From IMG/VR virus record IMGVR_UViG_3300032236_002285, positions 412,237 through 476,236 of that record: DNA of 64,000 nt; one strand, written 5' to 3'. The translations under genes were made by a program, and so were the position numbers. Shown one piece after another: positions 49,075 through 64,000 of this stretch. How positions within the stretch are numbered: position 1 is the stretch's first letter; each line of letters opens with the position of its first letter. The notes under the pieces are model-generated. The model ran no database searches, had not been told where the DNA came from, and saw only the letters and a list, made by a program, of their open reading frames with translations.

Positions 49075-49133
49075 AAAATTGTATTTAAATTGTTAATGTG
49101 ACAAAGGTAATACAAAAAATTCAAAAATAAAAG

Positions 49134-50889: not shown

Positions 50890-51158
50890 ATTCCTAACTT
50901 ATTTAGTTTTAAATCTCTTTCACCAGCCAAATCCACAAAACACTCAATTGGTACAAACTCTTCATGAAAGTAATAAGGACCTTTTAACTTAACACATATT
51001 CTATCCGGAAAATGAAAATCAACATCAGTTACTTTATATTTTTCACCTATGATTAAACGCTCATTATCATAATCACCACCTATATAACCAATAGAATAAG
51101 AATTTAACTTAACACAAGTTAAAATATCACCTATTTTGAAATCTTTATATGTTTTCAT
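50886..51158 (-). CDS. SH3-like small protein, C-tag
   Basis: IGDILTCV..LIIGEKYKV; ends RDLKLNKLGI. Confidence 0.7.
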   Translation of the reverse strand: MKTYKDFKIGDILTCVKLNSYSIGYIGGDYDNERLIIGEKYKVTDVDFHFPDRICVKLKGPYYFHEEFVPIECFVDLAGERDLKLNKLGI

Positions 51159-51544
51159 ATACCTAACTCACTTAATATTTTATCACGCTTAATCGCTTCA
51201 TCTGAATCAAAGTAAATATCACCACGAAGATAAAACTCCATCGTCTCAGTATAGTTTTGACCATGTTGTGATGAACGAAACTGAACCGTTAACCTCTTTG
51301 CTTTAGCAACCAAATCTGGACAATCCAATATCTTTGATTTTAACTGCTCACGAATATCCTTTTTAACCCAATTCATCAACTCATGTGTTAAACACGAACC
51401 GTTCATTGTACTGCGCTCAACTTCTTCATAAGCATCCTGATATCGTGTAGGTAATCTAAACTCTAAAGTATCAACCTGCCAAAACATCCACCAATACTTG
51501 CGGTAAACCGCATAACCCTTATTATGTTTTTTAATATAACCCAT
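51155..51544 (-). CDS. Hypothetical protein, C-tag
   Basis: Ends RDKILSELGI. Confidence 0.7.
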   Translation of the reverse strand: MGYIKKHNKGYAVYRKYWWMFWQVDTLEFRLPTRYQDAYEEVERSTMNGSCLTHELMNWVKKDIREQLKSKILDCPDLVAKAKRLTVQFRSSQHGQNYTETMEFYLRGDIYFDSDEAIKRDKILSELGI

Positions 51545-52043
51545 CTAATATCTTATTTAAAACATTATCTCTTCTTAAAGCAACATAGTCAAAGTATTCA
51601 TCTACCAAGCGAACCGTATAAACAAAACACGGCTTACCTAAACTATTACCACCTTTACCTTTAGCAGCACCTAATCTATACAATTCATCATCAGATAATA
51701 AACAAAATGAATTAATTTGACTATCTGAACAAAGGCATTGAAAGTAAGGCATATCTATCTTCTTGGTATATAAATCATGAAATTCTTTAGTAGTTTTATA
51801 ACCAGGTATCACCTCATGTAAAGTTTCTTCAGTATAACCCTTACGAATCCACTCAATTGAATTACAAACCAATCCATTGTAATACCAATACTTATCATAA
51901 TCAGTAATAATCTGAGTTGATTTAAAAACAATTTTACCAAGATACTCTTGACCAGGTATAAGTATCTCACCCCAATGAGCCGCCATTGATTTCTTACACT
52001 TCAATGTCAAAGATTCTCCTAATTTTGTTTTTTCTAAGTTCAT
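51531..52043 (-). CDS. Hypothetical protein, C-tag (start uncertain)
   Basis: LKCKK..LIPGQEY; RDNVLNKIL near end. Confidence 0.65.
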   Translation of the reverse strand: MNLEKTKLGESLTLKCKKSMAAHWGEILIPGQEYLGKIVFKSTQIITDYDKYWYYNGLVCNSIEWIRKGYTEETLHEVIPGYKTTKEFHDLYTKKIDMPYFQCLCSDSQINSFCLLSDDELYRLGAAKGKGGNSLGKPCFVYTVRLVDEYFDYVALRRDNVLNKILDGLY

Positions 52044-52116
52044 TTCTCAAAGTTTTAATTGTTTGCCTCATAGCACGAGCAAACGTTTCATCAGCTAATC
52101 CATTCATCCAACTCAT
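51994..52116 (-). CDS. 40-aa C-tag protein (not in ORF track)
   Basis: MSWMNGLADETF...LRKNKIRRIFDIEV*; ATGA-coupled to the ACP-like gene. Confidence 0.5.
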   Translation of the reverse strand: MSWMNGLADETFARAMRQTIKTLRNELRKNKIRRIFDIEV

Positions 52117-52403
52117 AAACCCAACTCTTCTATTTTCTTATTACGAAGATACGATTTAAATACCATCGGCTTTTTATTTCCTCCAATAAAAGCATCCACC
52201 ACTTCATCTGGAATAACAATGTCTAATCTTTTCTCTAGCTCCATTGCCAACTCAACACAATCTAAATCATCATAACCATTATCATTCCAAGTTTTATTCA
52301 TATCTAATGGATAACCTATCTTTTCATTAGCAACCTCCATCAAAATCTCTGGAGTTACCTTAACTATATCTGGACACTTTTCGATCATTTCTAATTCTGT
52401 CAT
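52113..52403 (-). CDS. Acyl carrier protein-like protein lacking the pantetheine serine, C-tag
   Basis: GYDDLDCVELAMELEKRLDIVIPDE versus ACP GxDSLDxVELxMxxE..F.IxIPDE; ends RNKKIEELGL. Confidence 0.8.
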   Translation of the reverse strand: MTELEMIEKCPDIVKVTPEILMEVANEKIGYPLDMNKTWNDNGYDDLDCVELAMELEKRLDIVIPDEVVDAFIGGNKKPMVFKSYLRNKKIEELGL

Positions 52404-52777
52404 AGTATTTGCTTTAATTTTTTATCTCTTATTTCTTGTAATAGTGAAGGTATATACTGACCCCACTTTATATAAATCTTCATCTTTTCAGCATCCCAAT
52501 CAAAATCATCAATTGATTTATAACTATTTTTGCCATATACCGCCGTGTGATGATTAATCAACATATCAATACACTCATTCATAAACACCTGACGAATTCC
52601 AATATCCGATATCTCACCAGCCCAATCTGTTAACTGCTTATGAAATTCAGACCACTCATTTAACTTTCTCATTCGCTTACTATGTTGACGGGTTTCTTTA
52701 AAGAATCTCCAAACTATTCCAACAATTACAAACAAAAACACTAAAAATAATGCCGCTTGTATAATCTTAAATATCAT
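52400..52777 (-). CDS. N-terminal TM protein, C-tag
   Basis: Ends RDKKLKQIL. Confidence 0.7.
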   Translation of the reverse strand: MIFKIIQAALFLVFLFVIVGIVWRFFKETRQHSKRMRKLNEWSEFHKQLTDWAGEISDIGIRQVFMNECIDMLINHHTAVYGKNSYKSIDDFDWDAEKMKIYIKWGQYIPSLLQEIRDKKLKQIL

Positions 52778-53067
52778 ATACCTAACTTATTTAACTTTTC
52801 TTGACGATTTATTAATTTAGTAATATCAACCAAATACCCTTTAGTAAAACAACCAGCAATAGTTAACCTAACACTCGTCATTTTATCCCAATCTATTGTA
52901 AATTCAGCATCATACTCTACCTTACCAAACACCACCTTAGGACCTTTATCTGAATACATATGAATAGTAATAATATCACCAATATCAAAATGATGATAAT
53001 AATGAACATCAGTATCTAAACAGATACTAACACCACCCTTCATTACTTCTAAATAATAAACCGTCAT
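52774..53067 (-). CDS. Small protein, C-tag
   Basis: Probable start ATG 53067, 6 nt after TATCTTTG; ends RQEKLNKLGI. Confidence 0.7.
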   Translation of the reverse strand: MTVYYLEVMKGGVSICLDTDVHYYHHFDIGDIITIHMYSDKGPKVVFGKVEYDAEFTIDWDKMTSVRLTIAGCFTKGYLVDITKLINRQEKLNKLGI

Positions 53068-53073
53068 AAAACA

Positions 53074-53105
53074 CAAAGATACGAATAATATTTTAAAAAA
53101 ACAAA
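53074..53105 (-). promoter_or_regulatory. Bacteroidota sigma70 promoter
   Basis: TTTG-N20-TATCTTTG. Confidence 0.7.
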
Positions 53106-53112
53106 AATCAAT

Positions 53113-53763: not shown

Positions 53764-54024
53764 ATGATAGAACACTTTAAACTAACAGATATAAATATAC
53801 AATCAAACGAAGGTAAATTACTAATGGCAGCAGTAGCCATTCTTACCTCTATCGATCATAAACATATCATCTCAGGTAGATGGGGTGGCACAATAACACC
53901 AGATACAGCAGTTAAACAAATAACAGAACTATCTAACAAAATCTACTACGAAGAAGAATACAAAGCAGAACAACAAAGAATCGAAAGAGATAATAAAATT
54001 AATAAGATACTAAGAAATGAGTAA
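53764..54024 (+). CDS. Small protein, C-tag
   Basis: RDNKINKIL near end. Confidence 0.7.
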   Translation: MIEHFKLTDINIQSNEGKLLMAAVAILTSIDHKHIISGRWGGTITPDTAVKQITELSNKIYYEEEYKAEQQRIERDNKINKILRNE

Positions 54025-54406
54025 TTTAACTAACAGGTCAGCGTGGCACGGTGCTGGTATTGCACAAATAACAGGGTCTCAAGGCTCTATAGGAATAACA
54101 GGCGCTAAAGGTACACCAGGTAACCAATTCCAAATAGAAGAACTTGAAGAACTACAAAAAAAGTATCATAACCGCTTTATCATTAGAATAGAATACGATG
54201 ATGTAGACTTATCTCCTACTAACCTAATAAAAGATACTCACGAAGTGAGAGTGTCTAAAGACACTACTACTACCAATAGAGAATATAAGCTCATACCTAA
54301 AAGTATTTCTAATATAGTAAACGAAACAGATAAATTCATACAAACTCTAATAGTAATGATTAGAGATGAAAAATTAGACAAAATCATCAATGGCAGAAAA
54401 AGTTAA
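54017..54406 (+). CDS. Protein with short Gly-X-Y run, C-tag
   Basis: GSQ-GSI-GIT-GAK-GTP-GNQ; RDEKLDKII near end. Confidence 0.7.
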   Translation: MSNLTNRSAWHGAGIAQITGSQGSIGITGAKGTPGNQFQIEELEELQKKYHNRFIIRIEYDDVDLSPTNLIKDTHEVRVSKDTTTTNREYKLIPKSISNIVNETDKFIQTLIVMIRDEKLDKIINGRKS

Positions 54407-54629
54407 AAAAATAGGTTGGGAAAAAGCTTCACTATTTAATAAGAACTTCGATAAAATATACGACTTCTGGAAAAAGAAAGCCGAAGACGAATATAACTAC
54501 TACGATGACCTGAAACTAATCAAAGAACATAATAAAGTAATTATCTATATTATAATAGATGATATTGACCAATACACAGAACGTGAAGAATGGCATAATG
54601 ACCCAGATGACCCAGAAACAATAATATAA
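54390..54629 (+). CDS. Hypothetical protein
   Basis: 79-aa ORF coupled to the upstream gene. Confidence 0.6.
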   Translation: MAEKVKKIGWEKASLFNKNFDKIYDFWKKKAEDEYNYYDDLKLIKEHNKVIIYIIIDDIDQYTEREEWHNDPDDPETII

Positions 54630-54632
54630 GAT

Positions 54633-54821
54633 ATGGTAAGAGTACCTTGTTATAACTGCGGAATAGGAATTGATTTAGAACCAATCGGGATTCGGTCGGG
54701 TTATGATACCTTATGTAAAGAATGTAAATGCCATATAGAATCAGATAAAAGAGATAAGAAGTTAGACAAACTATTGAAAAGAAATATATGGCAACGAATA
54801 AAACAACTTATAAAAATATAA
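54633..54821 (+). CDS. Zn-ribbon protein, C-tag + amphipathic tail
   Basis: CYNC..CKEC; RDKKLDKLL-KRNIWQRIKQLIKI. Confidence 0.65.
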   Translation: MVRVPCYNCGIGIDLEPIGIRSGYDTLCKECKCHIESDKRDKKLDKLLKRNIWQRIKQLIKI

Positions 54822-54976
54822 ACGGGGTTTATAAATTAAAGATAATAGTATGTAATAATTGCGGTACTATCATGGATGGTGAAGTTAGTTCTTGTACCGT
54901 ATGCAGAGATGCGAAATTGGGTAAATTACTGAAAAGGTCTATTTGGAGGAAAATTAGAGATTTTGTTAGATTATAA
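54788..54976 (+). CDS. Zn-ribbon paralog, C-tag + amphipathic tail
   Basis: CNNC..CTVC; RDAKLGKLL-KRSIWRKIRDFVRL. Confidence 0.6.
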   Translation: MATNKTTYKNINGVYKLKIIVCNNCGTIMDGEVSSCTVCRDAKLGKLLKRSIWRKIRDFVRL

Positions 54977-54982
54977 AAACAT

Positions 54983-55009
54983 TACAGAAAAGTGCTACGT
55001 TTTTCTGTA
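54983..55009 (+). repeat. 27-bp imperfect palindrome, copy 1
   Basis: tacagaaaa-gtgctacgt-ttttctgta. Confidence 0.85.
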
Positions 55010-55231
55010 GAATTTTGTGTTGATCCTATTCACGCTTATCAGCATCTACCGAAACCTTCTACTCTGTACTGATCCGTATATACAAGCACCTCTGAAAGCC
55101 GCACCCCCATTACGTTTCCGAGGTGTCATTTTTTCACAAAAAATCGATGTTAATTTGGCCTTACCACAAAGGTTTTCAGCGGCCGAATGACGATTTGACA
55201 AAACCAAATAAAGTTGTCCACATATTACATA

Positions 55232-55258
55232 TACAGAAATTTGCTGCGTTTTTCTGTA
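55232..55258 (+). repeat. 27-bp imperfect palindrome, copy 2
   Basis: tacagaaat-ttgctgcgt-ttttctgta. Confidence 0.85.
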
Positions 55259-55263
55259 GTCAA

Positions 55264-55290
55264 TTATATACCTAATGACTCTAATTTATC
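55264..55290 (-). pseudogene. Orphan C-tag-coding remnant
   Basis: GAT AAA TTA GAG TCA TTA GGT ATA TAA (DKLESLGI*) directly after the stop of 55289..55534. Confidence 0.6.
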
Positions 55291-55534
55291 ATATACCTAA
55301 TGATTTTAGTTTTTTATCACGACTTTCGTCTAAGTTTAATTCTGTATCGCGCCAGTGAGCGTATAAACTCTTAGTTTGTAATTGCTTTTTAGAACATCTT
55401 TTACATATTCGGAATAAGGTATGCTGCTGCCAACGGTAGGTTGAGCTGTTTTGCTTTTTTACCACAAGAGAGCCAAAAGAATCGCGATCTGTAAAGTATC
55501 GCCAGTTGTGGCCTATTATTTTACAAAGTATCAT
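55289..55534 (-). CDS. DUF1660-like small protein, C-tag
   Basis: CKIIGHNW..CKRC; ends RDKKLKSLGI. Confidence 0.7.
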   Translation of the reverse strand: MILCKIIGHNWRYFTDRDSFGSLVVKKQNSSTYRWQQHTLFRICKRCSKKQLQTKSLYAHWRDTELNLDESRDKKLKSLGI

Positions 55535-55665
55535 ATTCCTAAATTTCTTAGTTTCTGCTGTCCTACTGGTGATGTAGCATCTTCATTTACATCACCATAG
55601 AATGTTATAAAGATAAAGATAAAAAGTGGGTCTACAAAATTATGTAGCGTTTTTCTGTAACTACT
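55531..55665 (-). pseudogene. Start-less frame ending in C-tag
   Basis: ...SPVGQQKLRNLGI*; no ATG/GTG/TTG in frame; 5' part overlaps palindrome copy 3. Confidence 0.45.
55633..55659 (+). repeat. 27-bp imperfect palindrome, copy 3
   Basis: tacaaaatt-atgtagcgt-ttttctgta. Confidence 0.8.
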
Positions 55666-55882
55666 TTAGAATAGAATCTATCTTTGTTTCTCGCCATTTG
55701 TCTAATGGGGTTAGTATCCTTTCAATTGTGTTTAAGTGTAGTGTTGTTACCCGTTTATTTTCGGTGGTGAATATATCACGGTATGCACCGCCTAGTGATA
55801 GTGGTGTTTTTATTATATAGATGTTACCTTTTTGGAAGGTGATATCGTGTAGAGTAAAGGTTTTTATACAGATGTATTTCAT
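55661..55882 (-). CDS. SH3-like small protein, C-tag
   Basis: MKYICIK..FQKGNIYI; ends RETKIDSILK. Confidence 0.7.
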   Translation of the reverse strand: MKYICIKTFTLHDITFQKGNIYIIKTPLSLGGAYRDIFTTENKRVTTLHLNTIERILTPLDKWRETKIDSILK

Positions 55883-55903
55883 ACTTTTTCGAGTATTACA
55901 TAT

Positions 55904-55930
55904 TACAGAAAAGTGCCGCGGATTTCTGTA
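55904..55930 (+). repeat. 27-bp imperfect palindrome, copy 4
   Basis: tacagaaaa-gtgccgcgg-atttctgta. Confidence 0.85.
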
Positions 55931-55935
55931 GTTTA

Positions 55936-56274
55936 TTAGAATAATATTACTGGTGGTTGGTTATTTAAGTAAAGTGCATAGGTGAATAAGCAAATTGTGG
56001 TTATAAGCCATATCCACCAAGATTTTTTTGTCATAAATCTGTTTTCGGATTGAACTTCTTTGTTTTTAGCGAACAAGAGTAGATATAGATATGCTTTGAT
56101 AGTTGATGATATCAGTATAAGTATTAAGATTAATGTTTTTAATTCAAATCCTATCATTTTAGAATTAGGTCCAAACTTCAGTGAATTAAAACTTAACAAA
56201 TTAGTTGTTCTGCTTATGATAAATAGCATGGCAAATCCGATAATGAATGCTATTAGTTTGTGTGATGCTTTCAT
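55936..56274 (-). CDS. Three-TM membrane protein
   Basis: Three hydrophobic helices; TAACTTTG upstream. Confidence 0.7.
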   Translation of the reverse strand: MKASHKLIAFIIGFAMLFIISRTTNLLSFNSLKFGPNSKMIGFELKTLILILILISSTIKAYLYLLLFAKNKEVQSENRFMTKKSWWIWLITTICLFTYALYLNNQPPVILF

Positions 56275-56353
56275 AGTTTTGTTTTAAGCAAAGTTACTAT
56301 AATATAAAATAACTACCAAAATCATATGTAATCTAGCGTGTGTATTTCATACT

Positions 56354-56692
56354 TTATAATGATTCAATCTTAGCAATTACTTTATCTCTACGTTTGATAG
56401 CTGATTCGTTTTTATCACCGGTAGAGTTGTTAGACCAGAATGTATTGAAGTCAAATCTTACATAGAAGTTGTAGTTATCATTACCTGAGATACCACCTGA
56501 ACGAGCATTATAAGATTTAGGGAATTTGGCTTTATAAGCTTCAGCTTCGTCTTTTGTTTCAAAGTAAGCGGTAATACTTCTTACTTCATTAGCATCTCCA
56601 ATATCATTTACAGATGTTAATAAAGGTAGGGCGTAGTAGCCACTGGTATCTGTAGGGTTTTTATAATCTAGACGGTGAACAAGTAGTTTCAT
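56354..56692 (-). CDS. Hypothetical protein
   Basis: 112 aa; promoter TTTG-N19-TATCTTTG at 56709-56739. Confidence 0.7.
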   Translation of the reverse strand: MKLLVHRLDYKNPTDTSGYYALPLLTSVNDIGDANEVRSITAYFETKDEAEAYKAKFPKSYNARSGGISGNDNYNFYVRFDFNTFWSNNSTGDKNESAIKRRDKVIAKIESL

Positions 56693-56748
56693 AGTGTAGT
56701 GATTTATACAAAGATATGAAATATTACTAACAAAACAAAATTGTGAGG

Positions 56749-57306
56749 TTAAATGTTATTATATCCCTCAACGGATTCTACTGGTGGTTTTCCAATCTCT
56801 TGTAGGAAATCGTTTAATCTATCGATGATTATCTCATCATCATGTATAATATCATAATCATTAAACAATTCTATATAATCTTTATTATAGAATAATAGCC
56901 AAATGTCACTAACTGGGTTATTATAAAGGTAAATATCACCAACAACCACCTTTGGAAAATGTTCTAACGATGTTAATTTATTATTTTTACAACTAAAATA
57001 ACCACCAACGGATTCAGGACAATCTTCCAAAGATGTTAATTGATTATAAGAACAATTAAAATTACCACCAACGTATTTAGGAGCACCTTCCAAAGATATT
57101 AGTTTATTATCAATACAATTAAAATCACCAGTAACCTTTCTAAACTTTAATGGTAGCTTTGCTAATCCTTTATTTTCTAAATCAACATTACCATCAACAT
57201 CAATCGAACCATCTTCGTTAATAGTATAATCTTCTATACCACAAATTTTACATATATCATCAATGTCATTTTCAATAAATGATTCATATAGTTTTAAGTA
57301 TTTCAT
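56749..57306 (-). CDS. LRR protein paralog A with CTS-like leader
   Basis: Probable start ATG 57306 (MKYLKLYESFIE); about 22-aa repeats VGGxFxCxxNxLTSLExxP. Confidence 0.85.
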   Translation of the reverse strand: MKYLKLYESFIENDIDDICKICGIEDYTINEDGSIDVDGNVDLENKGLAKLPLKFRKVTGDFNCIDNKLISLEGAPKYVGGNFNCSYNQLTSLEDCPESVGGYFSCKNNKLTSLEHFPKVVVGDIYLYNNPVSDIWLLFYNKDYIELFNDYDIIHDDEIIIDRLNDFLQEIGKPPVESVEGYNNI

Positions 57307-57310
57307 TATC

Positions 57311-57922
57311 TTATATATTATTATATCCTTCAACGGATTTCACTGGTGGCTTACCAATCTCTTGTAAGAACTCATTTAATCTATCAATGATAATGCTATT
57401 ACCACGAATAACATCGTAATCGTTGAGTAATTCAATCTTATCTTTATCCTTGAATAATTGCCAAATATTATCAACCGGATTATCATAAAGGTAAATATCA
57501 CCACCAACCTGTGGGAAATGTTCTAAAGATCTTAATTGATTATTACAACAATTAAAATAACCACTAACTGATCTAGGAGAACCAACCAAACTAGTTAATT
57601 GATTATGACTACAATCAAAACGATCACCTACCGATTCAGGACAACCTTGCAAACTAGTTAATCTATTGAAAGAGCAATAAAAACTACCACCAACATATTG
57701 AGGAGAACCCTCTAATGATGTTAATTGATTATTAGAACAATAAAAAGTACCAGTAACCTTACCGAACTTTAGTGGTAGCTTTTTTAATCCTTTATTATTT
57801 AAATTAACATTACCATCGACATCAATAGATCCATCCGAGTTTATAGTATAGTTTTTTATACCATACTTTTTACAGATAGCATCAATTTCATTAAATGATT
57901 CATATAGTTTTAAGTATTTCAC
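57311..57922 (-). CDS. LRR protein paralog B with CTS-like leader
   Basis: GTG start, MKYLKLYESFNE; one more repeat than paralog A; near-identical caps. Confidence 0.85.
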   Translation of the reverse strand: MKYLKLYESFNEIDAICKKYGIKNYTINSDGSIDVDGNVNLNNKGLKKLPLKFGKVTGTFYCSNNQLTSLEGSPQYVGGSFYCSFNRLTSLQGCPESVGDRFDCSHNQLTSLVGSPRSVSGYFNCCNNQLRSLEHFPQVGGDIYLYDNPVDNIWQLFKDKDKIELLNDYDVIRGNSIIIDRLNEFLQEIGKPPVKSVEGYNNI

Positions 57923-57949
57923 AAGGTATATATTAAATGTCTTTTATAT

Positions 57950-58045
57950 AAAAAAAGACAACCTGCCCTTGATTTCTTCAGACATTTTATAGTCCGCCCT
58001 TCGTACTTTGATATCCAGTCGGCAACCTGTTTATCGTTTCTGACA
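57950..58045 (-). ncRNA. Candidate small RNA
   Basis: TATCTTTG (58049-58056) followed by about 95 GC-richer nt ending in a weak hairpin plus U-tract; only mini-ORFs under 20 aa. Confidence 0.3.
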
Positions 58046-58071
58046 ATACAAAGATAAGGAGGATTACTTAA

Positions 58072-58347
58072 TTAAACAAGGGATTCTAATAATTTATTTC
58101 TTTTATATACTTTATAATCTTCTAATGGCATCCAATGTGTTGGTTGAAAAGGAAATTGAGGATGATTGTCGGTAAAGAAGTTATCTGAATCTTGTGGGTC
58201 TTGAAAGTTCCATTTATATTCACTACTCATAAGATACCACATAATAGCTTCTTGGTTACCATCAGTAGTCATAACATCATATCCTTCTGGTGGATAGTTG
58301 CTATCTGGTTGGTTATTTAAATCTTTATTATTAAAGGCTATCCACAT
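58072..58347 (-). CDS. Small protein (DUF551-like PTHWMPL tail), C-tag
   Basis: MWI..N..P..V...PTHWMPL; ends RNKLLESLV. Confidence 0.65.
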   Translation of the reverse strand: MWIAFNNKDLNNQPDSNYPPEGYDVMTTDGNQEAIMWYLMSSEYKWNFQDPQDSDNFFTDNHPQFPFQPTHWMPLEDYKVYKRNKLLESLV

Positions 58348-58349
58348 TG

Positions 58350-58613
58350 TTATATTAGTTCTGATAATTTAATACCTCTTAAAATTGATTTCCATTTACT
58401 TACTTCTGAGTTATCTATAATGCTATCTGCTTTATAGATAATAACTTTATCATCAACTATTTCATAGATAACTTTTTTAGTATGATTTAAATGTGACATT
58501 GGTTTACCAATTAACATAATCATATTATCACCTATAAGTTTAACATCTTGTATCTCAGTGGTGTGATTAGGATAGTGTAGTTTAATAAGGTCTATAATTT
58601 CTTGTTTATCCAT
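58350..58613 (-). CDS. Small protein, C-tag
   Basis: Ends RGIKLSELI; TATCTTTG 4 nt upstream of ATG. Confidence 0.7.
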   Translation of the reverse strand: MDKQEIIDLIKLHYPNHTTEIQDVKLIGDNMIMLIGKPMSHLNHTKKVIYEIVDDKVIIYKADSIIDNSEVSKWKSILRGIKLSELI

Positions 58614-58661
58614 TAGGCAAAGATAATATTTAGCAATTAATTATTTTTATAATGTATAGGT

Positions 58662-59045
58662 TTATTTCAAATCCTTTACTGATAACTTACCTTTAAATAA
58701 ACAACCTTGTGATTCAAAATCTTTTCTTTCAAGTCCTAAACTTGTTAAATAATTAGAAACTTCTTCTAATTTAGAAAGGTCAAATTCAAAAATACTAGAC
58801 ATATATTGTCCATTTTTATCTTTATTAAAACCTAAATTGAACTTATCATTCAACATATCCATTATTTTAACATTTACCTTGCTATCAAGATCCTTGTTTA
58901 ATATTCTTGGCATTCCATTATTTGTGAATACCCAAATAAAAACAGATTCTGCATATGTACCCATAACATTTCTTTTCCAAGATGTTTTAGCACCTGAGAC
59001 AATATCATTGAATAAACCTTCGTTAAATCTTTTTAAGTGTTTCAT
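58662..59045 (-). CDS. Hypothetical protein with CTS-like N-terminus
   Basis: MKHLKRFNEG. Confidence 0.7.
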   Translation of the reverse strand: MKHLKRFNEGLFNDIVSGAKTSWKRNVMGTYAESVFIWVFTNNGMPRILNKDLDSKVNVKIMDMLNDKFNLGFNKDKNGQYMSSIFEFDLSKLEEVSNYLTSLGLERKDFESQGCLFKGKLSVKDLK

Positions 59046-59099
59046 ATATTTAATTTTTTTACAGGAGTATATATAAAAGAAAATATTTATTTAATTTAG

Positions 59100-59819
59100 T
59101 TAGCTTAATATTTGATTTAACTTCTCATCACGATATTGTGATATGTCTGGTTGCCAATCATATAGATAAGAATGTATTCTAAATCTTTTATCTACATATT
59201 TAGTCCATTGTGGTCCATTATAACTAAAAGGACCACCCAACTCTGTTTGTTGAAAAGCAGTTACTGGTAGATAATAACCAACCTCAGTAAATAACTTTTC
59301 TAACATATCTACGAATTGATTCAAAGCTAATTGTTCTTCTACATAATCATTATAATTGTCTTCTAAGTGCCATTGAAGCATATTATCTCTATCAATGGCG
59401 GCTTGAACACCCTGATTAACCATTTCTTTCCTAACATCACCAAGAATATTAGAGTTACCAAATGGTCGTTTGAATTCCATAGTGATGTAAGTGTCATCTT
59501 CATCCCAATCTAAGTAAAGTTGTTTTAATAAACCAATCTGCCAATCCTCTACATTATACTTTTGTATAAAGTCAGGTTTTAATTGACACGATATGGTGAT
59601 AAACTGCATCGCAGGATAAATGTCATTTAATTCTTTTTTGGTTAAATACTCATTATCTTCTAAACGCCATTGAAGCATATTATCATAGTAACCACTCTCA
59701 TCTGAGTGGTGTGCTTTCAATGACTTAATCCTTTGTATCATATCATCGGTAATATGATATGCTCGTGGTATATTTTTTGATACCCACTTACCTGAATAAA
59801 AGAATTCTGATGTGTACAT
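59100..59819 (-). CDS. Hypothetical protein with internal duplication, C-tag
   Basis: DNMLQWRLEDN / DNMLQWHLEDN; ends RDEKLNQILS. Confidence 0.7.
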   Translation of the reverse strand: MYTSEFFYSGKWVSKNIPRAYHITDDMIQRIKSLKAHHSDESGYYDNMLQWRLEDNEYLTKKELNDIYPAMQFITISCQLKPDFIQKYNVEDWQIGLLKQLYLDWDEDDTYITMEFKRPFGNSNILGDVRKEMVNQGVQAAIDRDNMLQWHLEDNYNDYVEEQLALNQFVDMLEKLFTEVGYYLPVTAFQQTELGGPFSYNGPQWTKYVDKRFRIHSYLYDWQPDISQYRDEKLNQILS

Positions 59820-60061
59820 TATTTAATTTCTAATACGTTAAATACGTTATCAATCTTAGCTTCTCTGATATCTGCTAACTCTACATAATAGATAATAGCA
59901 GAGTATGATTCAATTGATCGATGAGGTCCAGAAGAAACACCTATTGAGTATTCTGTTTTGATAATCTGTCTGATATCAATTTTTTGTAGAAAGTCATTAA
60001 CCGCAACTTCTAATGTATGAGTATGGTCCTCATTAAATATCTTTACTTTAGCATTTATCAT
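59819..60061 (-). CDS. Small protein, C-tag
   Basis: REAKIDNVF near end. Confidence 0.65.
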   Translation of the reverse strand: MINAKVKIFNEDHTHTLEVAVNDFLQKIDIRQIIKTEYSIGVSSGPHRSIESYSAIIYYVELADIREAKIDNVFNVLEIK

Positions 60062-60315
60062 ATACCTAGTTCTTTTAATTTCTTATCTCTTTCTTGTTCT
60101 ACATTCAGCGCAACATTACGCCAATCCGTTTTTTCATCACCAGAATGTGCCACTCTAACTTGATTAATAAAACACCTTGGACAATATCTAAATTCAGTAT
60201 TTACTGGAAAGGTATATGATGGTATTACTCTATGTGTTAAATTAACAGGTGATGTTATATGGGGAACATCTTCTTTATAGTAGTTCCACTTATGACCAAA
60301 CAACTTACACTTCAT
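60058..60315 (-). CDS. DUF1660-like small protein, C-tag
   Basis: MKCKLFGHKW..CPRC; ends RDKKLKELGI. Confidence 0.7.
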   Translation of the reverse strand: MKCKLFGHKWNYYKEDVPHITSPVNLTHRVIPSYTFPVNTEFRYCPRCFINQVRVAHSGDEKTDWRNVALNVEQERDKKLKELGI

Positions 60316-60550
60316 TTGCTTCTGTTTGTTTTATCAACTCTAATATAATAGATTTATTATCTTGACAGGTTTGAATTAGTGAATGAAGTAATGGTATACC
60401 ACCATCAGTAGCAAGTATCTTTTGAAATTTATCTTCATTTGACAATATGTCAGTTAAGGTCCAAAATGGACTTAGTTTATTTCTAAGCTTTGCTTGTGGG
60501 GTTTCTGGTACCCAATTACCGTTAATATCTCTGGTGCCGCTATCTTGCAT
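60305..60550 (-). CDS. Hypothetical protein
   Basis: 81-aa ORF. Confidence 0.6.
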   Translation of the reverse strand: MQDSGTRDINGNWVPETPQAKLRNKLSPFWTLTDILSNEDKFQKILATDGGIPLLHSLIQTCQDNKSIILELIKQTEANEV

Positions 60551-60553
60551 ATA

Positions 60554-60775
60554 TTACTTTAATTGTATCATAGAAACAGACTCTACACCTCTGTAAATAA
60601 GAATTGTAGTTGAGTCATTTAATTGTACTTTATATAAACCGTGATCTATTTCATCCATTACTTTTTCTACTTTAGTATTAGATGAAGGTGCGGGTGAGTT
60701 GTTTTCAGTTGTTACCACTGGTGTGTTACAAGCAAAAAGACATAGTGTGATTAGAATGATAAGTATATTTTTCAT
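60554..60775 (-). CDS. Small lipoprotein
   Basis: MKNILIILITLCLFA-C lipobox. Confidence 0.7.
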   Translation of the reverse strand: MKNILIILITLCLFACNTPVVTTENNSPAPSSNTKVEKVMDEIDHGLYKVQLNDSTTILIYRGVESVSMIQLK

Positions 60776-60835
60776 AATGTAAATATAAGATAATTAATTG
60801 AATAAACAAAATAGATATAAAATATAAAAGTTTAT

Positions 60836-61132
60836 ATGATTATATATAAAGGTGTTTCTTATAACTCTACTAAATTAATTTGCACTAGTAAGCTATCTTT
60901 AATGTTAAGCTACCCTAATTATAACAAATTAGAAATAGGTAAGATATATGATGGTTTCTTAGTTTATGTTTATGGTAATGGTACATCTGGTTGTGTTGAT
61001 AAACCAAATGGAGATAATACTCAACCATGTGGTTGGTATATAGATGGAGTTAGTAGTTCTATAAATGAGAACTTTGGTCTTGAGTTTTTTAAGCCACTTA
61101 GAGATTACAACTTATCATTGATAAATTTATAA
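60836..61132 (+). CDS. SH3-like small protein, degenerate C-tag
   Basis: KLIC..LEIGKIYD; ends RDYNLSLINL. Confidence 0.6.
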   Translation: MIIYKGVSYNSTKLICTSKLSLMLSYPNYNKLEIGKIYDGFLVYVYGNGTSGCVDKPNGDNTQPCGWYIDGVSSSINENFGLEFFKPLRDYNLSLINL

Positions 61133-61354
61133 TATTCCTAACTTCTTTAGTTTCTTATCACGAGTATATTCAATTGATTCAAATCTTTTATGATGATAAA
61201 AACGTTTATTGCCATAATCATTAATAATAGCAAATGAATGGTCGCTAATAGAAACATTATCACCTAACACTTCATAAGCTTTACCAATAGTTAAATTGAC
61301 ATGTTCATCTTGAGCACCATCAACTTCACCATTATTAATACAAACTACTTTCAT
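61127..61354 (-). CDS. SH3-like (DUF6501-like) protein, C-tag
   Basis: MKVVCIN..LTIGKAYEV..IINDYG; ends RDKKLKKLGIL. Confidence 0.7.
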   Translation of the reverse strand: MKVVCINNGEVDGAQDEHVNLTIGKAYEVLGDNVSISDHSFAIINDYGNKRFYHHKRFESIEYTRDKKLKKLGIL

Positions 61355-61626
61355 ATTCCTAACTGATCTAATTTTTGATTTCTATATTCTTCTAAGGTAA
61401 TAAAATTATTAGGGTCAACATCCATAGTTGTTTCTAATTTATCATGATGGATAATAAGATACGACTTACCATGACCCCTTCCTGTGCATTTATCATAAAC
61501 TTCAAAGATATCACCTTTATAATAAGCTCTTTCAATATAAACACCTTTATAATAATAACCTTTCTTAGGTATCGCCCGAAATGCCTTTAGGGGCAGCGGC
61601 GCGTCATTAATAGCAATCACTTTCAT
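61351..61626 (-). CDS. SH3-like small protein, C-tag
   Basis: MKVIAIN..KGDIFEV; ends RNQKLDQLGI. Confidence 0.7.
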   Translation of the reverse strand: MKVIAINDAPLPLKAFRAIPKKGYYYKGVYIERAYYKGDIFEVYDKCTGRGHGKSYLIIHHDKLETTMDVDPNNFITLEEYRNQKLDQLGI

Positions 61627-61841
61627 AGAATCTTATCTAATTGTCTCCTTCGCCATTCATCTAATTTAAGGAATGTGCTTTTATAGTAATACTCTTTGTG
61701 ACCTCTATCATTTATTATCCACCAGTTGTAATTATCAATACCCGGTAGGCCGCATCCTGGCAGGACATCATATATCTTACCATAGGTTAATTCATATTGT
61801 AAACCTTGTGACCTGTATTTCTTAATACAAACTACTTTCAC
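61623..61841 (-). CDS. SH3-like (DUF6501-like) protein, C-tag
   Basis: MKVVCIK..LTYGKIYDV..IINDRG; ends RRRQLDKIL. Confidence 0.7.
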   Translation of the reverse strand: MKVVCIKKYRSQGLQYELTYGKIYDVLPGCGLPGIDNYNWWIINDRGHKEYYYKSTFLKLDEWRRRQLDKIL

Positions 61842-62059
61842 TTCAATATCTTTTTAATCTTCTCTTCTCTGTGGCAAGCTTCACAAATTAACTTACTATC
61901 ACCAATAGTTAAATCACCTGTTGGTCTCAATATAACATGAATTATAATATTTACAATGGTAACAAATCTACTAGGTTTCTTAACAAAGTATTTATCTTTT
62001 ACTAAATCAAATTTAGATTGACAATCGGGACAAGTTCTTTCAGTTATTCTCTTACTCAT
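61838..62059 (-). CDS. Zn-ribbon protein, C-tag
   Basis: CPDC..CEAC; ends REEKIKKILK. Confidence 0.7.
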   Translation of the reverse strand: MSKRITERTCPDCQSKFDLVKDKYFVKKPSRFVTIVNIIIHVILRPTGDLTIGDSKLICEACHREEKIKKILK

Positions 62060-62184
62060 ATGCCTAACTCATTTAACTTTTCTTCTCTAAGAATAGATGT
62101 TATATCATTAATACATCTAATTGGTTTTAATTCACCATCAACTAAAGATATGTAATAACTATTATCTTTAACAGGATAATTCAT
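62056..62184 (-). CDS. 42-aa C-tag protein (not in ORF track)
   Basis: MNYPVKDNSYYISLVDGELKPIRCINDITSILREEKLNELGI*. Confidence 0.7.
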   Translation of the reverse strand: MNYPVKDNSYYISLVDGELKPIRCINDITSILREEKLNELGI

Positions 62185-62428
62185 TCTTTTTCCAGCTTCT
62201 TAGAGTATTATTACCAATCATTAAATTCAATTTATTCAATTGAATTTCATTGTCTAATCTAAATTTTATACCATAAACATTTTTCAAAAAGCTCATACCG
62301 AAATCATTTTCTAATAAAGTTTCAATAGGTGTACAATCAAATTCTTTTTTTACATTAGCAATAATGTTATTGTAAGAATTTATAAAATCTTCTTTAGATT
62401 GAAATTTAGATTTATAAATAAAATTCAT
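62168..62428 (-). CDS. Hypothetical protein
   Basis: 86-aa ORF. Confidence 0.55.
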   Translation of the reverse strand: MNFIYKSKFQSKEDFINSYNNIIANVKKEFDCTPIETLLENDFGMSFLKNVYGIKFRLDNEIQLNKLNLMIGNNTLRSWKKNELSC

Positions 62429-62474
62429 TTTAAATATATCATAATTAATGTGTAAAGTTGTAAATATTTATACC

Positions 62475-62501
62475 TACAAAATTCCGCATCGTTTTTCTGT
62501 A
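62475..62501 (+). repeat. 27-bp imperfect palindrome, copy 5
   Basis: tacaaaatt-ccgcatcgt-ttttctgta. Confidence 0.75.
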
Positions 62502-62505
62502 GTTT

Positions 62506-62778
62506 TTAAATGCCTAACGCTTCGAGTTTATCTTGTCTAATAGATTGTGTATCTAATATCATAGTGCCACTATAATGACCTGTTACCATATTACGAAGTT
62601 GTTCATATGAATAGTTAATAATACGACCATTTTCCCATTCAATAGCAACTTCATACTCAAACGGAGCATTAACAACTTTCCCATGTGTATTTAATTTAGA
62701 GAGTGTATTTTCTTTATCAACCATTTCCTCTATCCAAATAACTTTATCACCTATATTTAGTTTCATAGAATCAATCAT
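62506..62778 (-). CDS. SH3/KOW-like small protein, C-tag
   Basis: LNIGDKVIW; ends RQDKLEALGI. Confidence 0.7.
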   Translation of the reverse strand: MIDSMKLNIGDKVIWIEEMVDKENTLSKLNTHGKVVNAPFEYEVAIEWENGRIINYSYEQLRNMVTGHYSGTMILDTQSIRQDKLEALGI

Positions 62779-62866
62779 TATAAAATATTTAATTCAACTT
62801 CTTTGATTTCTAATTGGTCATTTGTGTACACTTCATGAGTGTATATCTACCCTAAATTAGGGTGTA

Positions 62867-63322
62867 TTAAGCCCCTACCTTCCAAGCATTCTTAACAATC
62901 TTTCTAATTTGATTAGCATCTGCTTTATTACCAATCACTGAACCATCTTTAATAGTGAAAGCATGACCAGTTACACGAATAATATAAGTACCTTTATTAT
63001 ATTCTTTAACAAAAGTACCTACTGACATTTGTGATTTACCACCATTGGTCTTTAAATATTTACTATCAATCTTTTTAGTTACTTTACGATTAAGGCGAGT
63101 TTTAGCATCAGACATTCTATCCATGCCTTGAGGAAACCCACGAGTGCCTTTACGCATCTGACGATTGAATGTATCAGCTACCCAAGTATGAGCTTTATCA
63201 TATTCCATACCATAAGCAGAAGCAACAGCACGAACAACGCAGTCAGCTCGTTCTGAACGTGCTAAAGCAGAATCGGAATAACCTTTAATAGCTTCGGAGG
63301 TGGCTGTGTATGGTATCTTCAT
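62867..63322 (-). CDS. Conserved-type phage hypothetical protein (DCVVRA motif)
   Basis: ERADCVVRAVASA..GH AFTIKDG, suggestive of a papain-like Cys/His pair; TATCTTTG upstream at 63342-63349. Confidence 0.6.
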   Translation of the reverse strand: MKIPYTATSEAIKGYSDSALARSERADCVVRAVASAYGMEYDKAHTWVADTFNRQMRKGTRGFPQGMDRMSDAKTRLNRKVTKKIDSKYLKTNGGKSQMSVGTFVKEYNKGTYIIRVTGHAFTIKDGSVIGNKADANQIRKIVKNAWKVGA

Positions 63323-63373: not shown

Positions 63374-64000
63374 TTAATACTTTATGAATATATTCGATAC
63401 ATTATCCACTATTAAATAATAAGTGCCTGGTACAAACCAACTAACATCTATTGAACCACAACCCATCGGCATATATTTAGAATACCAGATTCTACCATCT
63501 ATTGACATAATACTTACTTTACTATATTTAGGTAAGGTAACTACTATCTTACTATTAGTAGGGTTTGGATAAAAACTGAATTTAGGTAATTGATTATCTA
63601 CAATAACCAATGGACTACATTCTGTAATAGTATCATATAAAGCATCAAATGCTGTTACTGGCATATTATCATGTGACCAAGATTTCCTTATAGTTGGTGG
63701 CATTAAATCATCATAACACCAACAAATAGAATCACTGGTTGAAACGGTGACATAAGTGGTTAATGTGGCAAGTGTTATTGGTGGGAAAGGTAGTAACACT
63801 TTATATTTAAGTGTGGTATCACCATAAATAGTAAATGTAGTATCTAATAATAAAGTCCTGGCAGCATCACTGGTGAATACAGCCATTTCTACATTTGATT
63901 TACAATTACTAGGGTTGATAATAGTTTCATTAATATAGTAAGCTTGTGAGTAAGCATTTATTGATATTAGTAAACTAAGTAAGGTTAATAGTTTTTTCAT
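63374..64000 (-). CDS. Secreted protein with Sec signal peptide and T9SS type-A C-terminal sorting domain
   Basis: MKKLLTLLSLLISINAYSQ signal; FYPNPT..I...VSIMSIDGR..IDVS..PGTYYLIV..FIK CTD. Confidence 0.88.
   Translation of the reverse strand: MKKLLTLLSLLISINAYSQAYYINETIINPSNCKSNVEMAVFTSDAARTLLLDTTFTIYGDTTLKYKVLLPFPPITLATLTTYVTVSTSDSICWCYDDLMPPTIRKSWSHDNMPVTAFDALYDTITECSPLVIVDNQLPKFSFYPNPTNSKIVVTLPKYSKVSIMSIDGRIWYSKYMPMGCGSIDVSWFVPGTYYLIVDNVSNIFIKY

What the first reader, a model, noticed from the sequence alone, without database searches (positions are those of the whole stretch)
54983..62501. Five same-orientation 27-bp palindromes (9-9-9) bounding gene cassettes
Copies at 54983, 55232, 55633, 55904 and 62475 all have exact length 27, arms TACA[GA]AA[AT][AT] / [TA]TTTCTGTA and a GC-rich asymmetric 9-bp core, mostly ending CGT. 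Copies 2 and 4 also share an upstream TATTACATAT. Each lies a few nt after a gene end or tag remnant, yet all keep one orientation whether the gene is plus or minus, and they differ from the window's ordinary GC-stem terminators. Fixed arms with an oriented spacer resemble tyrosine-recombinase sites (dif/lox-type geometry) or initiator iterons; no recombinase is in this window.
Basis: partly seen in the sequence, partly recalled or inferred. Interest (0 to 1): 0.68.

Follow-up and report, generated by a model that had tools for sequence, protein, structure and literature searches.

The report
Palindromic junction elements between phage cassettes
Five copies of a 27-bp palindrome sit at the joints between small genes in a variable region of a huge freshwater phage of Bacteroidota. 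Related phages carry the same element, often fused to a host-type promoter, and differ from one another exactly at these joints, much like the 'PeSL' shuffling cassettes known from T4-type phages.

Summary
The five 27-bp palindromes are real (0.02 expected by chance). They are the only copies in the 476-kb record, a huge phage with a Gp23-type capsid, related to the Bacteroidota-infecting 'Mahaphage' genomes. Each starts 1-6 nt after a stop codon.

Several related freshwater contigs and the published 635-kb genome LR745206.1 carry the same element in 27- or 26-nt form, again in local clusters. In 12 of 45 copies the right arm (variant ATTTTGTA) supplies the TTTG -33 box of a Bacteroidota sigma-A promoter. 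TAnnTTTG follows exactly 19 nt later (window copy 3: TATCTTTA).

Homology between relatives breaks at the element far more often than expected: 39 of 286 alignment ends against about 4 expected, and 13 of 15 palindrome junctions against 60 of 151 others. Gene content and order between copies differ.

Orthologous copies can be exact reverse complements, so orientation is not conserved. The record has no integrase, resolvase, Y1, TnpB or IS110 gene.

Best reading: a PeSL-like stem-loop/promoter junction cassette that punctuates transcription and gives a homology patch for shuffling orphan genes. This is a new variant of a known kind. Copies 1 and 2 flank a conserved ORF-less 222-nt element.

The parts
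54983..55009 (.). Palindrome copy c1, at the convergent junction between the + strand Zn-ribbon genes and the - strand block. It is the 3' boundary of the conserved ORF-less element.
   Evidence: Flagged terminator-like on the + strand (13 pairs, 3-nt loop, T-rich tail). Orthologous copies in 7 relatives, in both core orientations.
55232..55258 (.). Palindrome copy c2, 5' boundary of the conserved ORF-less element. A weak -7-like box (TTTATTTG; TAAATTTG in L122) lies 21 nt after the arm.
   Evidence: Homology with L122 and L128 begins at its outer edge (55258/55260). The X2 contig's homology ends inside it.
55633..55659 (.). Palindrome copy c3. Read on the - strand its right arm is AATTTTGTA, which supplies a TTTG -33 box.
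55608..55638 (-). Predicted Bacteroidota sigma-A-type promoter fused to c3: TTTG (55638-55635), 19 nt, TATCTTTA (55615-55608). It lies upstream of gene 55289..55534.
   Evidence: -7 box found at N19. The same architecture with TATCTTTG is seen at 11 copies in relatives. Consensus from PMC6847099 and PMC7366714.
55904..55930 (.). Palindrome copy c4, between gene 55936..56274 (stop 5 nt away) and the ATG of 55661..55882 (21 nt away). There is no room for a promoter.
   Evidence: Orthologous copy L122:3837. An X4 contig starts matching exactly at 55904.
62475..62501 (.). Palindrome copy c5, 4 nt after the stop of the tagged gene 62506..62778. The right arm on the - strand is AATTTTGTA, but no clear -7 box follows.
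   Evidence: The tag-coding sequence plus palindrome is 81% identical over 64 nt to L123:10528-10588, which follows an unrelated gene.
55010..55231 (-). Conserved ORF-less element between c2 and c1, probably an ncRNA or cis-regulatory region. Strand not settled.
   Evidence: 78% mean column identity in 5 relatives. The core is also found in L126, L134 and the 635-kb genome LR745206.1, where no flanking protein of the window is conserved. No frame is open in all relatives. No Rfam match.
55264..55287 (-). Orphan remnant coding 'KLESLGI-stop', lying between the real stop of 55289..55534 and c2. It looks like a scar of a cassette swap within the tag-coding sequence.
   Evidence: 31 nt (55262-55292) are 97% identical to L122:3056-3085.
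55289..55534 (-). Cassette gene, 81 aa, weak DUF1660 match, ends ...RDKKLKSLGI.
   Evidence: Zero depth in the X3 and X4 relatives' contigs, so absent there.
55661..55882 (-). Cassette gene, 73 aa, between c4 and c3.
   Evidence: Present in L122, which also carries a second paralogue.
55936..56274 (-). Cassette gene, 112 aa, hydrophobic, upstream of c4.
   Evidence: Only a remnant with an internal deletion survives in L122.
62506..62778 (-). Cassette gene, 90 aa, ends ...RQDKLEALGI, upstream of c5.
54633..54976 (+). Two overlapping small Zn-ribbon genes (CxxC...CxxC) with an internal copy of the tag motif, running into c1. They are absent or replaced in the X3 and X4 relatives.
   Evidence: In L123 and L132 the orthologue reads through the palindrome.
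56709..56739 (-). Promoter of the conserved 112-aa gene 56354..56692 (TTTG-N19-TATCTTTG). It has no palindrome here, but carries one in L123, L128 and L132.
   Evidence: Homology between palindrome-bearing and palindrome-free versions begins at ATTTTGT, the -33 box.

Best explanation
The 27-bp palindromes are junction elements of a hyperplastic region, full of orphan genes, in a huge T4-superfamily phage that infects Bacteroidota. They work like the PeSL cassettes of T4-type phages.

Shown:
- Each element abuts the stop codon of the upstream gene.
- In about a quarter of family members its right arm is the -33 TTTG box of a host sigma-A-type promoter for the next gene. The other copies are 'stem-loop only' joints.
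- The element is a dispersed patch with 8-nt invariant arms, often extended by the conserved C-terminal-tag coding sequence upstream and the promoter downstream.
- Related genomes differ in gene content and order exactly at these elements.
- Orthologous copies occur in both core orientations.

Inferred:
- The stem-loop attenuates or terminates incoming transcription. This is most plausible for c1, at the convergent junction.
- The phage's general recombination machinery, not a dedicated site-specific recombinase, uses the repeats as crossover points. This would insert, delete, replace and reorder small cassettes and flip the palindrome core.
For: 1. Real and local. Five copies against 0.02 expected, and none elsewhere in 476 kb.
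2. Phage type. The record has a Gp23-family capsid protein (91.8 bits), 69% identical to those of the 635-642-kb genomes LR745206.1 and LR756502.1. These belong to the Mahaphage clade with predicted Bacteroidetes hosts (PMC7162821). The window also holds a T9SS sorting-domain protein.
3. The host-type promoter consensus TTTG-N19-21-TAnnTTTG occurs 61 times in the genome against 11-26 in shuffles. Sigma-70-type sites are not enriched.
4. 12 of 45 palindromes are followed by a -7 box 19-21 nt after the arm's TTTG. The background for other TT[T/C]TG sites is 4.5% (binomial p = 4.5e-7).
5. The same promoter exists with and without the palindrome. Homology starts at the -33 box.
6. Breakpoints. 39 of 286 alignment ends lie within 10 nt of an element, against 4.0 +/- 2.0 for random placement (maximum 12 in 2000 trials). 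13 of 15 gene junctions with a palindrome carry a breakpoint, against 60 of 151 without (Fisher p = 6e-4). Metagenome contigs start matching exactly at 54983 and 55904.
7. Cassette content and order differ between homologous elements. Examples: [HP]F1[HP]F3 in L128, F1-F13-[HP]-F3 in L123, and F3...c5...20 genes...F1 in the window.
8. Unrelated genes share 64-70 nt of 'tag-coding sequence plus palindrome' at 81% identity, and a tag remnant sits at c2.
9. PeSLs are defined as upstream stop codon + host promoter + stem-loop, with one subclass overlapping -35. They lie in hyperplastic regions and have recombination breakpoints inside them (PMC2839356, PMC4122927).
Against: - Only c3, and weakly c2, of the five window copies has a recognisable -7 box. 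Copy c4 lies 21 nt from an ATG and c5 lacks a box. So 'promoter cassette' describes the family, not every copy.
- The stems are weak (-5 to -8.5 kcal/mol on the gene-sense strand, z -1.6 to -3.4) and mostly lack a U-tract. Terminator activity is therefore unproven.
- Pairing shows no covariation above shuffled controls: 78.8% of cells paired against 83.4% in shuffles. Positions 9-10/18-19 are conserved mismatches.
- The near-invariant arm sequence, fixed length and genome-specific arm type (G:C or A:T) are not needed for a generic stem-loop. They fit a sequence-specific binding protein equally well.
- No RNA data and no read-level junction data were available.
- Breakpoint counts are not phylogenetically independent.
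Confidence: 0.6

Rival explanations
1. Operator for a dimeric, sequence-specific DNA-binding protein, encoded by the phage or the host. The 27-bp palindrome would span about -56 to -30 of the fused promoters (centre near -43, a class-II-activator or repressor position) and co-regulate this block of orphan genes. Recombination at the sites would be a side effect. This reading can coexist with the best explanation.
For: - The arms are invariant at 10 positions and G12/C16 nearly so across 45 copies. Flanks and orthologous genes are only 70-85% identical.
- No pairing covariation beyond sequence conservation.
- The function appears orientation-independent, because cores flip.
- Arm type changes on both arms together, and does so genome by genome: TACAGAAA/TTTCTGTA against TACAAAAA/TTTTTGTA in L126, with L070 mostly A:T-armed.
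- Stacked sites occur: four copies in 150 nt at L070:3035-3187.
- Position is fixed relative to -33.
Against: - No candidate binding protein was identified. Neighbouring conserved genes have no DNA-binding Pfam domain.
- Most copies have no promoter to regulate.
- The same promoter works, or at least persists, without the site in the window and in L122.
- Five sites in 476 kb is a very small regulon.
- The known Bacteroidetes LexA-like boxes (GGA-N5-TCC, CTAA-N5-TTAG) do not match.
Confidence: 0.3
2. Plain RNA hairpins: intrinsic terminators or 3'-end stabilisers of the upstream genes, repeated only because neighbouring genes were duplicated.
For: - Every copy starts 1-6 nt after a stop codon.
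- c1 passes a simple terminator scan. It lies at a convergent junction and is followed by a T-rich (G/A)TGTTT tail in most relatives, T-rich but different in L128, L126 and L134.
Against: - Flanking genes are not paralogues.
- Stems are AT-rich and weak, and a U-tract is mostly absent.
- There are no compensatory changes beyond one arm position, and mismatches are conserved.
- The loop flips relative to the direction of transcription.
- The apparent G.U wobble on the gene strand is better explained as the C-to-T change that creates the TTTG -33 box.
Confidence: 0.2
3. Core sites of a site-specific recombination system (dif/lox-like or attC-like). A recombinase, possibly host Xer or an unrecognised phage enzyme, would excise and integrate the cassettes.
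For: - Inverted arms around a central region.
- Position at the 3' end of cassettes.
- Homology breakpoints lie exactly at element edges.
Against: - No tyrosine or serine recombinase, Y1 HUH, TnpB or IS110 domain in the 97%-complete record.
- Geometry is 8 + 11 + 8 (or 13-1-13), not 11-13-nt arms around a 6-8-nt spacer.
- Core orientation is not conserved between orthologous copies.
- Element length differs (26 or 27 nt) between relatives.
- Breakpoints also fall inside the element and in the adjoining tag-coding sequence and the -33 box. This is typical of homologous exchange, not of a fixed cleavage point.
Confidence: 0.05
4. REP- or MITE-like selfish palindromes spread by a transposase that is now absent or host-encoded.
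For: - Short imperfect palindromes in intergenic DNA, some ending ...CTGTAG (a GTAG-like end).
- Stacked copies in L070.
- Within-genome homogeneity of copies.
Against: - No Y1/RAYT gene.
- Only 4-8 copies per genome, all in one syntenic region, even in 476-635-kb genomes.
- No clean presence/absence with target duplications. Where a copy is missing, the whole upstream flank differs.
Confidence: 0.05
5. Iterons of a replication origin.
For: Four copies lie within 950 bp, next to an AT-rich strand-switch region.
Against: - The repeats are inverted, not direct.
- They are separated by whole genes, and spacing and number vary among relatives.
- The cumulative GC-skew maximum is 34 kb away, at window 21568.
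- No initiator gene was recognised nearby.
Confidence: 0.02

Closest known systems
PeSL (promoter-early stem-loop) cassettes of T4-type phages (Arbiol et al. 2010, PMC2839356; Comeau et al. 2014, PMC4122927)
   Same: - A composite intergenic motif that starts at the stop codon of the upstream gene and joins a stem-loop to a promoter for the host's primary sigma factor. One PeSL subclass overlaps the -35 box, as here.
- Concentrated in hyperplastic regions full of orphan genes of a phage with a Gp23-type capsid.
- Insertions, deletions and replacements between relatives have their breakpoints in the motif.
   Different: - The promoter is the Bacteroidota -33/-7 type, not sigma-70.
- The stem-loop is AT-rich, of fixed length (26/27 nt) and nearly fixed arm sequence, instead of variable GGGG...CCCC stems.
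- Only about a quarter of copies carry a promoter.
- Copies are few (4-8) and confined to one region of a 0.5-0.6-Mb genome.
- The core flips between orthologues.
- Terminator and promoter activity and mini-circles are not shown here.
Integron attC sites
   Same: An imperfect palindrome at the 3' end of each promoter-poor small gene cassette. Cassette content varies between relatives.
   Different: - No IntI integrase, attI or common Pc promoter.
- The element is 27 bp, not 57-141 bp with R''-L''/L'-R' boxes.
- Orientation is not conserved, and many copies bring their own promoter.
REP/BIME elements and their RAYT transposases
   Same: Short imperfect extragenic palindromes just downstream of genes, sometimes stacked, and homogenised within a genome.
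   Different: - No RAYT gene.
- A handful of copies in one locus rather than hundreds genome-wide.
- Fused to promoters.
Stoperators and intergenic palindromes of mycobacteriophages (cluster A stoperators, cluster O 17-bp palindromes). Compared from my own knowledge, not checked here.
   Same: A short conserved site repeated in small intergenic gaps of a phage genome and presumed to bind one phage protein.
   Different: - Stoperators are asymmetric, orientation-dependent and spread over the whole genome.
- Here the site is palindromic, orientation-free and local, and no repressor is identified.

Membership tests
PeSL-type regulatory/shuffling cassette | Repeated intergenic motif concentrated in a hyperplastic, orphan-gene-rich region of a T4-superfamily phage | tested here: met
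   Gp23-family capsid protein in the record. All five copies lie in a 7.5-kb stretch of small genes without Pfam matches. Gene content is mosaic among relatives.
PeSL-type regulatory/shuffling cassette | Contains a consensus promoter for the host primary sigma factor | tested here: inconclusive
   Met for 12 of 45 family members (TTTG-N19-TA..TTTG; p = 4.5e-7 against background). Among window copies it is met for c3 and weakly for c2. It is not met for c1, c4 and c5. Promoter activity was not measured.
PeSL-type regulatory/shuffling cassette | Stem-loop-forming sequence adjacent to or overlapping the promoter, beginning at the upstream gene's stop codon | tested here: met
   8-bp arms, -5 to -8.5 kcal/mol. 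The right arm overlaps the -33 box. Stop codons lie 1-6 nt upstream.
PeSL-type regulatory/shuffling cassette | The stem-loop terminates or attenuates transcription | not testable with these tools
   No RNA run holds this DNA. Only c1 resembles an intrinsic terminator.
PeSL-type regulatory/shuffling cassette | Indel and replacement breakpoints between related phages fall in the motif | tested here: met
   39/286 alignment ends against 4.0 expected. 13/15 against 60/151 junctions, p = 6e-4. Exact edge coincidences at 54983, 55258 and 55904.
PeSL-type regulatory/shuffling cassette | Mini-circles formed by recombination between neighbouring motifs | not testable with these tools
   Only assembled contigs were served, not reads. 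The single 'goes back' joint (59387 to 55284, 33-nt side) lies in tag-coding repeat sequence and is not evidence for a circle.
Tyrosine-recombinase core site (dif/lox type) | Two 11-13-bp inverted binding arms around a 6-8-bp asymmetric spacer that sets direction | tested here: not met
   Invariant arms are 8 nt and the core is 10-11 nt. Length is 26 or 27 nt. The core is inverted between orthologous copies.
Tyrosine-recombinase core site (dif/lox type) | Cognate recombinase | tested here: not met
   PF00589 and PF00239 are absent from the 476-kb record, while the controls scored. Host Xer enzymes cannot be excluded.
Integron attC | IntI integrase, attI and Pc next to the array; attC of 57-141 bp with paired R/L boxes in one orientation | tested here: not met
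   No integrase. The element is 27 bp, with variable orientation.
REP/RAYT | Y1 HUH transposase (RAYT) and many dispersed copies | tested here: not met
   PF01797 absent. Five copies, all local.
Replication iterons | Closely spaced direct repeats next to an initiator gene, an AT-rich unwinding element and a skew switch | tested here: not met
   Inverted repeats separated by genes. The skew maximum lies elsewhere.
Rho-independent terminator | Stable GC-rich stem followed by a U-tract | tested here: inconclusive
   c1 passes a lenient scan. The others have weak AT-rich stems without a U-tract. No covariation support.

The most novel reading that the evidence does not exclude
The palindrome is the recognition site of a dedicated, still unrecognised phage protein. 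That protein would both gate transcription and catalyse or target cassette exchange: an integron-like gene-capture system without a known recombinase fold. The conserved ORF-less RNA-like element, always flanked by palindrome copies, would be its core component. The C-terminal RDxKLxxLGI tag would mark the captured cassette proteins.
Probability: 0.1. Interest if true: 0.8.

Novelty: new variant of a known kind. Interest (0 to 1): 0.5.

Why it matters
Huge phages of the Mahaphage group carry hundreds of orphan genes, and how these are gained, lost and expressed is unknown.

A short junction element that couples a host-type promoter to a palindrome, and that marks the places where related genomes differ, would carry the PeSL 'modular shuffling' idea over from enterobacterial and Vibrio T4-like phages. 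It would then apply to 0.5-0.6-Mb phages of Bacteroidota that use a different promoter grammar.

The element also gives concrete handles for experiments:
- a 27-mer for pull-downs;
- predicted transcription starts;
- predicted recombination joints.

In addition, it points to two unexplained companions: a conserved ORF-less element and a C-terminal peptide tag found on about 5% of the proteome.

Tried and rejected
- Rfam, gathering thresholds on the whole window and E<=10 on 54500-56500: nothing relevant.
- ARAGORN on the window: no tRNA or tmRNA.
- Megablast of 54000-63000 against GenBank phages: no match.
- The search for related loci with two neighbouring proteins in IMG/VR: no relatives.
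- Exact-pattern scan of IMG/VR: more than 116 loci, nearly all single matches that are probably chance. Only L070, from a 281-kb contig, holds a real cluster.
- RNA-level reading of the G.U pairs on the gene strand. I first took the TTTTGTA arms as wobble-preserving changes. I dropped this when the same change proved to create the TTTG -33 box at fixed spacing from a -7 box.
- Covariation test of the hairpin: not above shuffles.
- Bacteroidetes LexA-like SOS boxes: different motifs.
- Origin/iteron idea: GC skew gives no support.
- IS200/605, TnpB and IS110 (omega- or bridge-RNA) idea for the ORF-less element: no such genes.
- Small-protein reading of the ORF-less element: no frame is open in all relatives, there is a stop in L123, and there is no start codon.
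- The X1 joint 59387 to 55284 as a circle junction: only 33 nt of support, in repeated tag-coding sequence.
- RNAalifold on the ORF-less element, both strands: only short hairpins, and the strand stays undecided.
- Pfam on 24 neighbouring proteins: no DNA-binding or recombination domain.

Full report
**Observation**

The degenerate pattern is expected 0.02 times in shuffled sequence.

The window is the last 64 kb of a 476,236-bp IMG/VR virus record (29.9% G+C, 97% complete by CheckV). Neither the pattern nor looser versions occur anywhere else in it.

Read on the minus strand, which carries most genes here, each copy starts just after a stop codon:
- c5: 4 nt after gene 62506..62778.
- c4: 5 nt after 55936..56274.
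- c3: 1 nt after 55661..55882.
- c2: 30 nt after 55289..55534, but only 5 nt after an orphan 'KLESLGI-stop' remnant at 55264-55287.
- c1: at a convergent junction, 6 nt after the plus-strand gene 54788..54976.

**What kind of genome**

- The record encodes a Gp23-family major capsid protein. It is 69% identical to those of the 635- and 642-kb metagenomic phages LR745206.1 and LR756502.1.
- These belong to the 'Mahaphage' clade, predicted to infect Bacteroidetes (PMC7162821).
- A T9SS C-terminal sorting domain at the window's end fits that host.
- The Bacteroidota promoter consensus (-33 TTTG, -7 TAnnTTTG; PMC6847099, PMC7366714) occurs 61 times in the genome, against 11-26 in shuffles. Sigma-70-type sites are not enriched.
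- The record has no tyrosine or serine recombinase, Y1 transposase, TnpB or IS110 domain.

**Relatives**

Freshwater metagenomes hold relatives. Through homologues of the conserved 112-aa protein 56354..56692 I fetched contigs L122-L137.

- L122, L123/124/125, L128/129 and L132/133 each carry 3-4 copies of the same 27-mer.
- L126, L130, L134/135, an IMG/VR contig of 281 kb (L070) and LR745206.1 carry a 26-nt version. Several of these have arms TACAAAAA/TTTTTGTA.
- In every genome the copies are few and local. LR745206.1 has four within 10 kb of a 635-kb genome.

An alignment of 45 copies shows invariant arms at 10 positions, a near-constant G12 and C16, and conserved mismatches at positions 9-10/18-19. 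Pairing is no better than in column shuffles (78.8% against 83.4%). So the sequence is conserved, not merely the ability to fold.

Orientation is not conserved. L122:5862 and L128:9716 are the exact reverse complement of the orthologous L123:12342, within identical flanks.

**Link to promoters**

In gene-sense orientation many copies end in ATTTTGTA instead of TTTCTGTA. That TTTG is followed after exactly 19 nt by TATCTTTG or TATATTTG, and about 20-25 nt later by the start codon. Examples are L123:9931, 10562 and 11950; L128:6549 and 6960; L132:2586 and 4938; L126:2012 and 15444; L130:8055; and L134:1061.

Window copy c3 has TTTG-N19-TATCTTTA. Copy c2 has a weaker TTTATTTG. Copies c5, c4 and c1 have none.

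Twelve of 45 copies carry the box, against a background of 4.5% (p = 4.5e-7).

The promoter of the conserved 112-aa gene exists with the palindrome (L123, L128, L132) and without it (window, L122). The two forms become homologous at ATTTTGT. The palindrome is therefore an add-on that overlaps the -33 box. It spans about -56 to -30, taking the start site 5 nt after the -7 G as in F. johnsoniae.

I first read the G.U pairs on the gene strand as RNA-level selection. They are better explained as the change that makes the -33 box.

**Link to cassette exchange**

- In pairwise BLAST among the window and four non-redundant relatives, 39 of 286 alignment ends fall within 10 nt of an element. Random placement gives 4.0 +/- 2.0, with a maximum of 12.
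- Counted per gene junction, 13 of 15 junctions with a palindrome carry a breakpoint, against 60 of 151 without (p = 6e-4).
- Specific cases:
  - Homology with L122 and L128 starts at the outer edge of c2 (55258/55260).
  - Contigs of run X4 start matching exactly at 54983 and 55904.
  - A contig of X2 stops inside c2.
  - The Zn-ribbon genes left of c1 and the gene between c2 and c3 are absent from X3 and X4.
- Gene order differs. L128 has [HP]-F1-[HP]-F3. L123 has [HP]-F1-F13-[HP]-F3. L132 has three extra genes. In the window F3 lies 6.5 kb upstream of F1, with c5 and about 20 genes between them.
- Unrelated genes share 64-70 nt of 'tag-coding sequence plus palindrome' at 81% identity. A tag remnant sits beside c2.

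These counts are not phylogenetically independent, and palindrome gaps are longer than average. The effect is large all the same.

**Interpretation**

The anatomy and behaviour match the PeSL cassettes described for T4-type phages. Those comprise:
- the upstream gene's stop codon, a host primary-sigma promoter and a stem-loop that may overlap -35;
- a concentration in hyperplastic regions;
- breakpoints of insertions, deletions and replacements inside the motif (PMC2839356, PMC4122927).

I therefore read the five palindromes as PeSL-like junction elements of a Bacteroidota megaphage.

Shown:
- position at stop codons;
- fusion to host-type promoters in part of the family;
- conservation in a phage lineage;
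- coincidence with homology breakpoints;
- flipping of the core.

Inferred:
- transcription attenuation by the stem-loop (only c1 looks like a terminator);
- exchange by the phage's general recombination system rather than by a dedicated enzyme.

The main rival is not exclusive: the palindrome could be an operator for a dimeric protein. This is favoured by the invariant arm sequence, the fixed length, the genome-specific arm type and the stacked copies in L070. No candidate protein was found.

Dif/lox-type sites, attC, REP elements and iterons each fail defining features that were tested.

**By-products**

- Copies c2 and c1 enclose a 222-nt stretch with no conserved reading frame. It is 78% identical among five relatives. 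Its core recurs next to a palindrome in L126, L134 and LR745206.1, where none of the neighbouring window proteins is conserved. It has no Rfam match, and its strand is undecided.
- Thirty-three of about 630 predicted genes end in R-[D/E]-x-K-[L/I]-x-x-[L/I]-(GI or LK)-stop, against 0.64 expected. Twenty-one of them lie in the last 41 kb. Codons vary synonymously, so the selection acts on the peptide.

**Limits**

- No RNA run holds this DNA, and only assembled contigs could be laid on it. Promoter, terminator and mini-circle activity remain untested.
- Read laying was kept to 5,901 letters.

Noticed in passing
Whole record; in the window e.g. 23257-25083, 43278-43892, 47922-53112, 55289-55534, 60058-62778: A C-terminal peptide tag R-[D/E]-x-K-[L/I]-x-x-[L/I]-(GI|LK)-stop ends 33 of about 630 predicted genes, against 0.64 expected. 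R at -10 and K at -7 are present in 31 of 31. Tagged genes are mostly small proteins (median 91 aa), and 21 of them lie in the last 41 kb. Codons differ synonymously, so the peptide is under selection. The tag is also common in relatives (L130 repeat family D1). Function unknown.
   Followed up: partly
window 55010-55231: An ORF-less element bounded by palindromes c2 and c1. It is conserved in 8 relatives, including LR745206.1, where the flanking window proteins are not conserved. It contains an invariant TCTGAAA...TTTCAGA hairpin and the blocks GTATATAC and ATAGGATCAACACAAAA. No Rfam match; strand undecided.
   Followed up: partly
window 55264-55287: An orphan 24-nt remnant coding 'KLESLGI-stop', directly after the real stop of gene 55289..55534. 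It is a likely scar of a cassette swap within the tag-coding sequence.
   Followed up: yes
L070:3035-3187 (IMG/VR contig of 281 kb): Four palindrome copies are stacked within 150 nt of one intergenic region, and three further identical copies plus one flipped copy lie within 6 kb.
   Followed up: partly
L130:9263-10399 and 5465-5707; L123 about 9870-9930: Repeated units of about 150 nt have tRNA-like ends (AGTCAGGTGGCG ... CAGGTTCGAATCCTGTCCTGACTAC) but are not called as tRNAs by ARAGORN. In L123 one such 3' end abuts palindrome 9931.
   Followed up: no
window 56749-57922: Two adjacent repeat-rich ORFs (194 and 203 aa, weak LRR match). In the metagenome contigs they show many internal skips and back-joins and very high summed depth, so this is a hypervariable repeat protein family.
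   Followed up: no
window 34978-36435 (-): A 485-aa protein with a tyrosinase central domain (E = 1.3e-28), unusual cargo for a phage.
   Followed up: no
window 63374-64000 (-): The protein at the end of the record carries a T9SS Por_Secre_tail sorting domain (E = 1.5e-5, just under Pfam's cut-off). This fits a Bacteroidota host.
   Followed up: partly
L123:12328-12555 and L132:7908-8138: In these relatives the small Zn-ribbon gene next to the c1-type palindrome lacks the stop codon seen in the window. It reads through the palindrome, which is translated as ...LQKSVAFFC....
   Followed up: no
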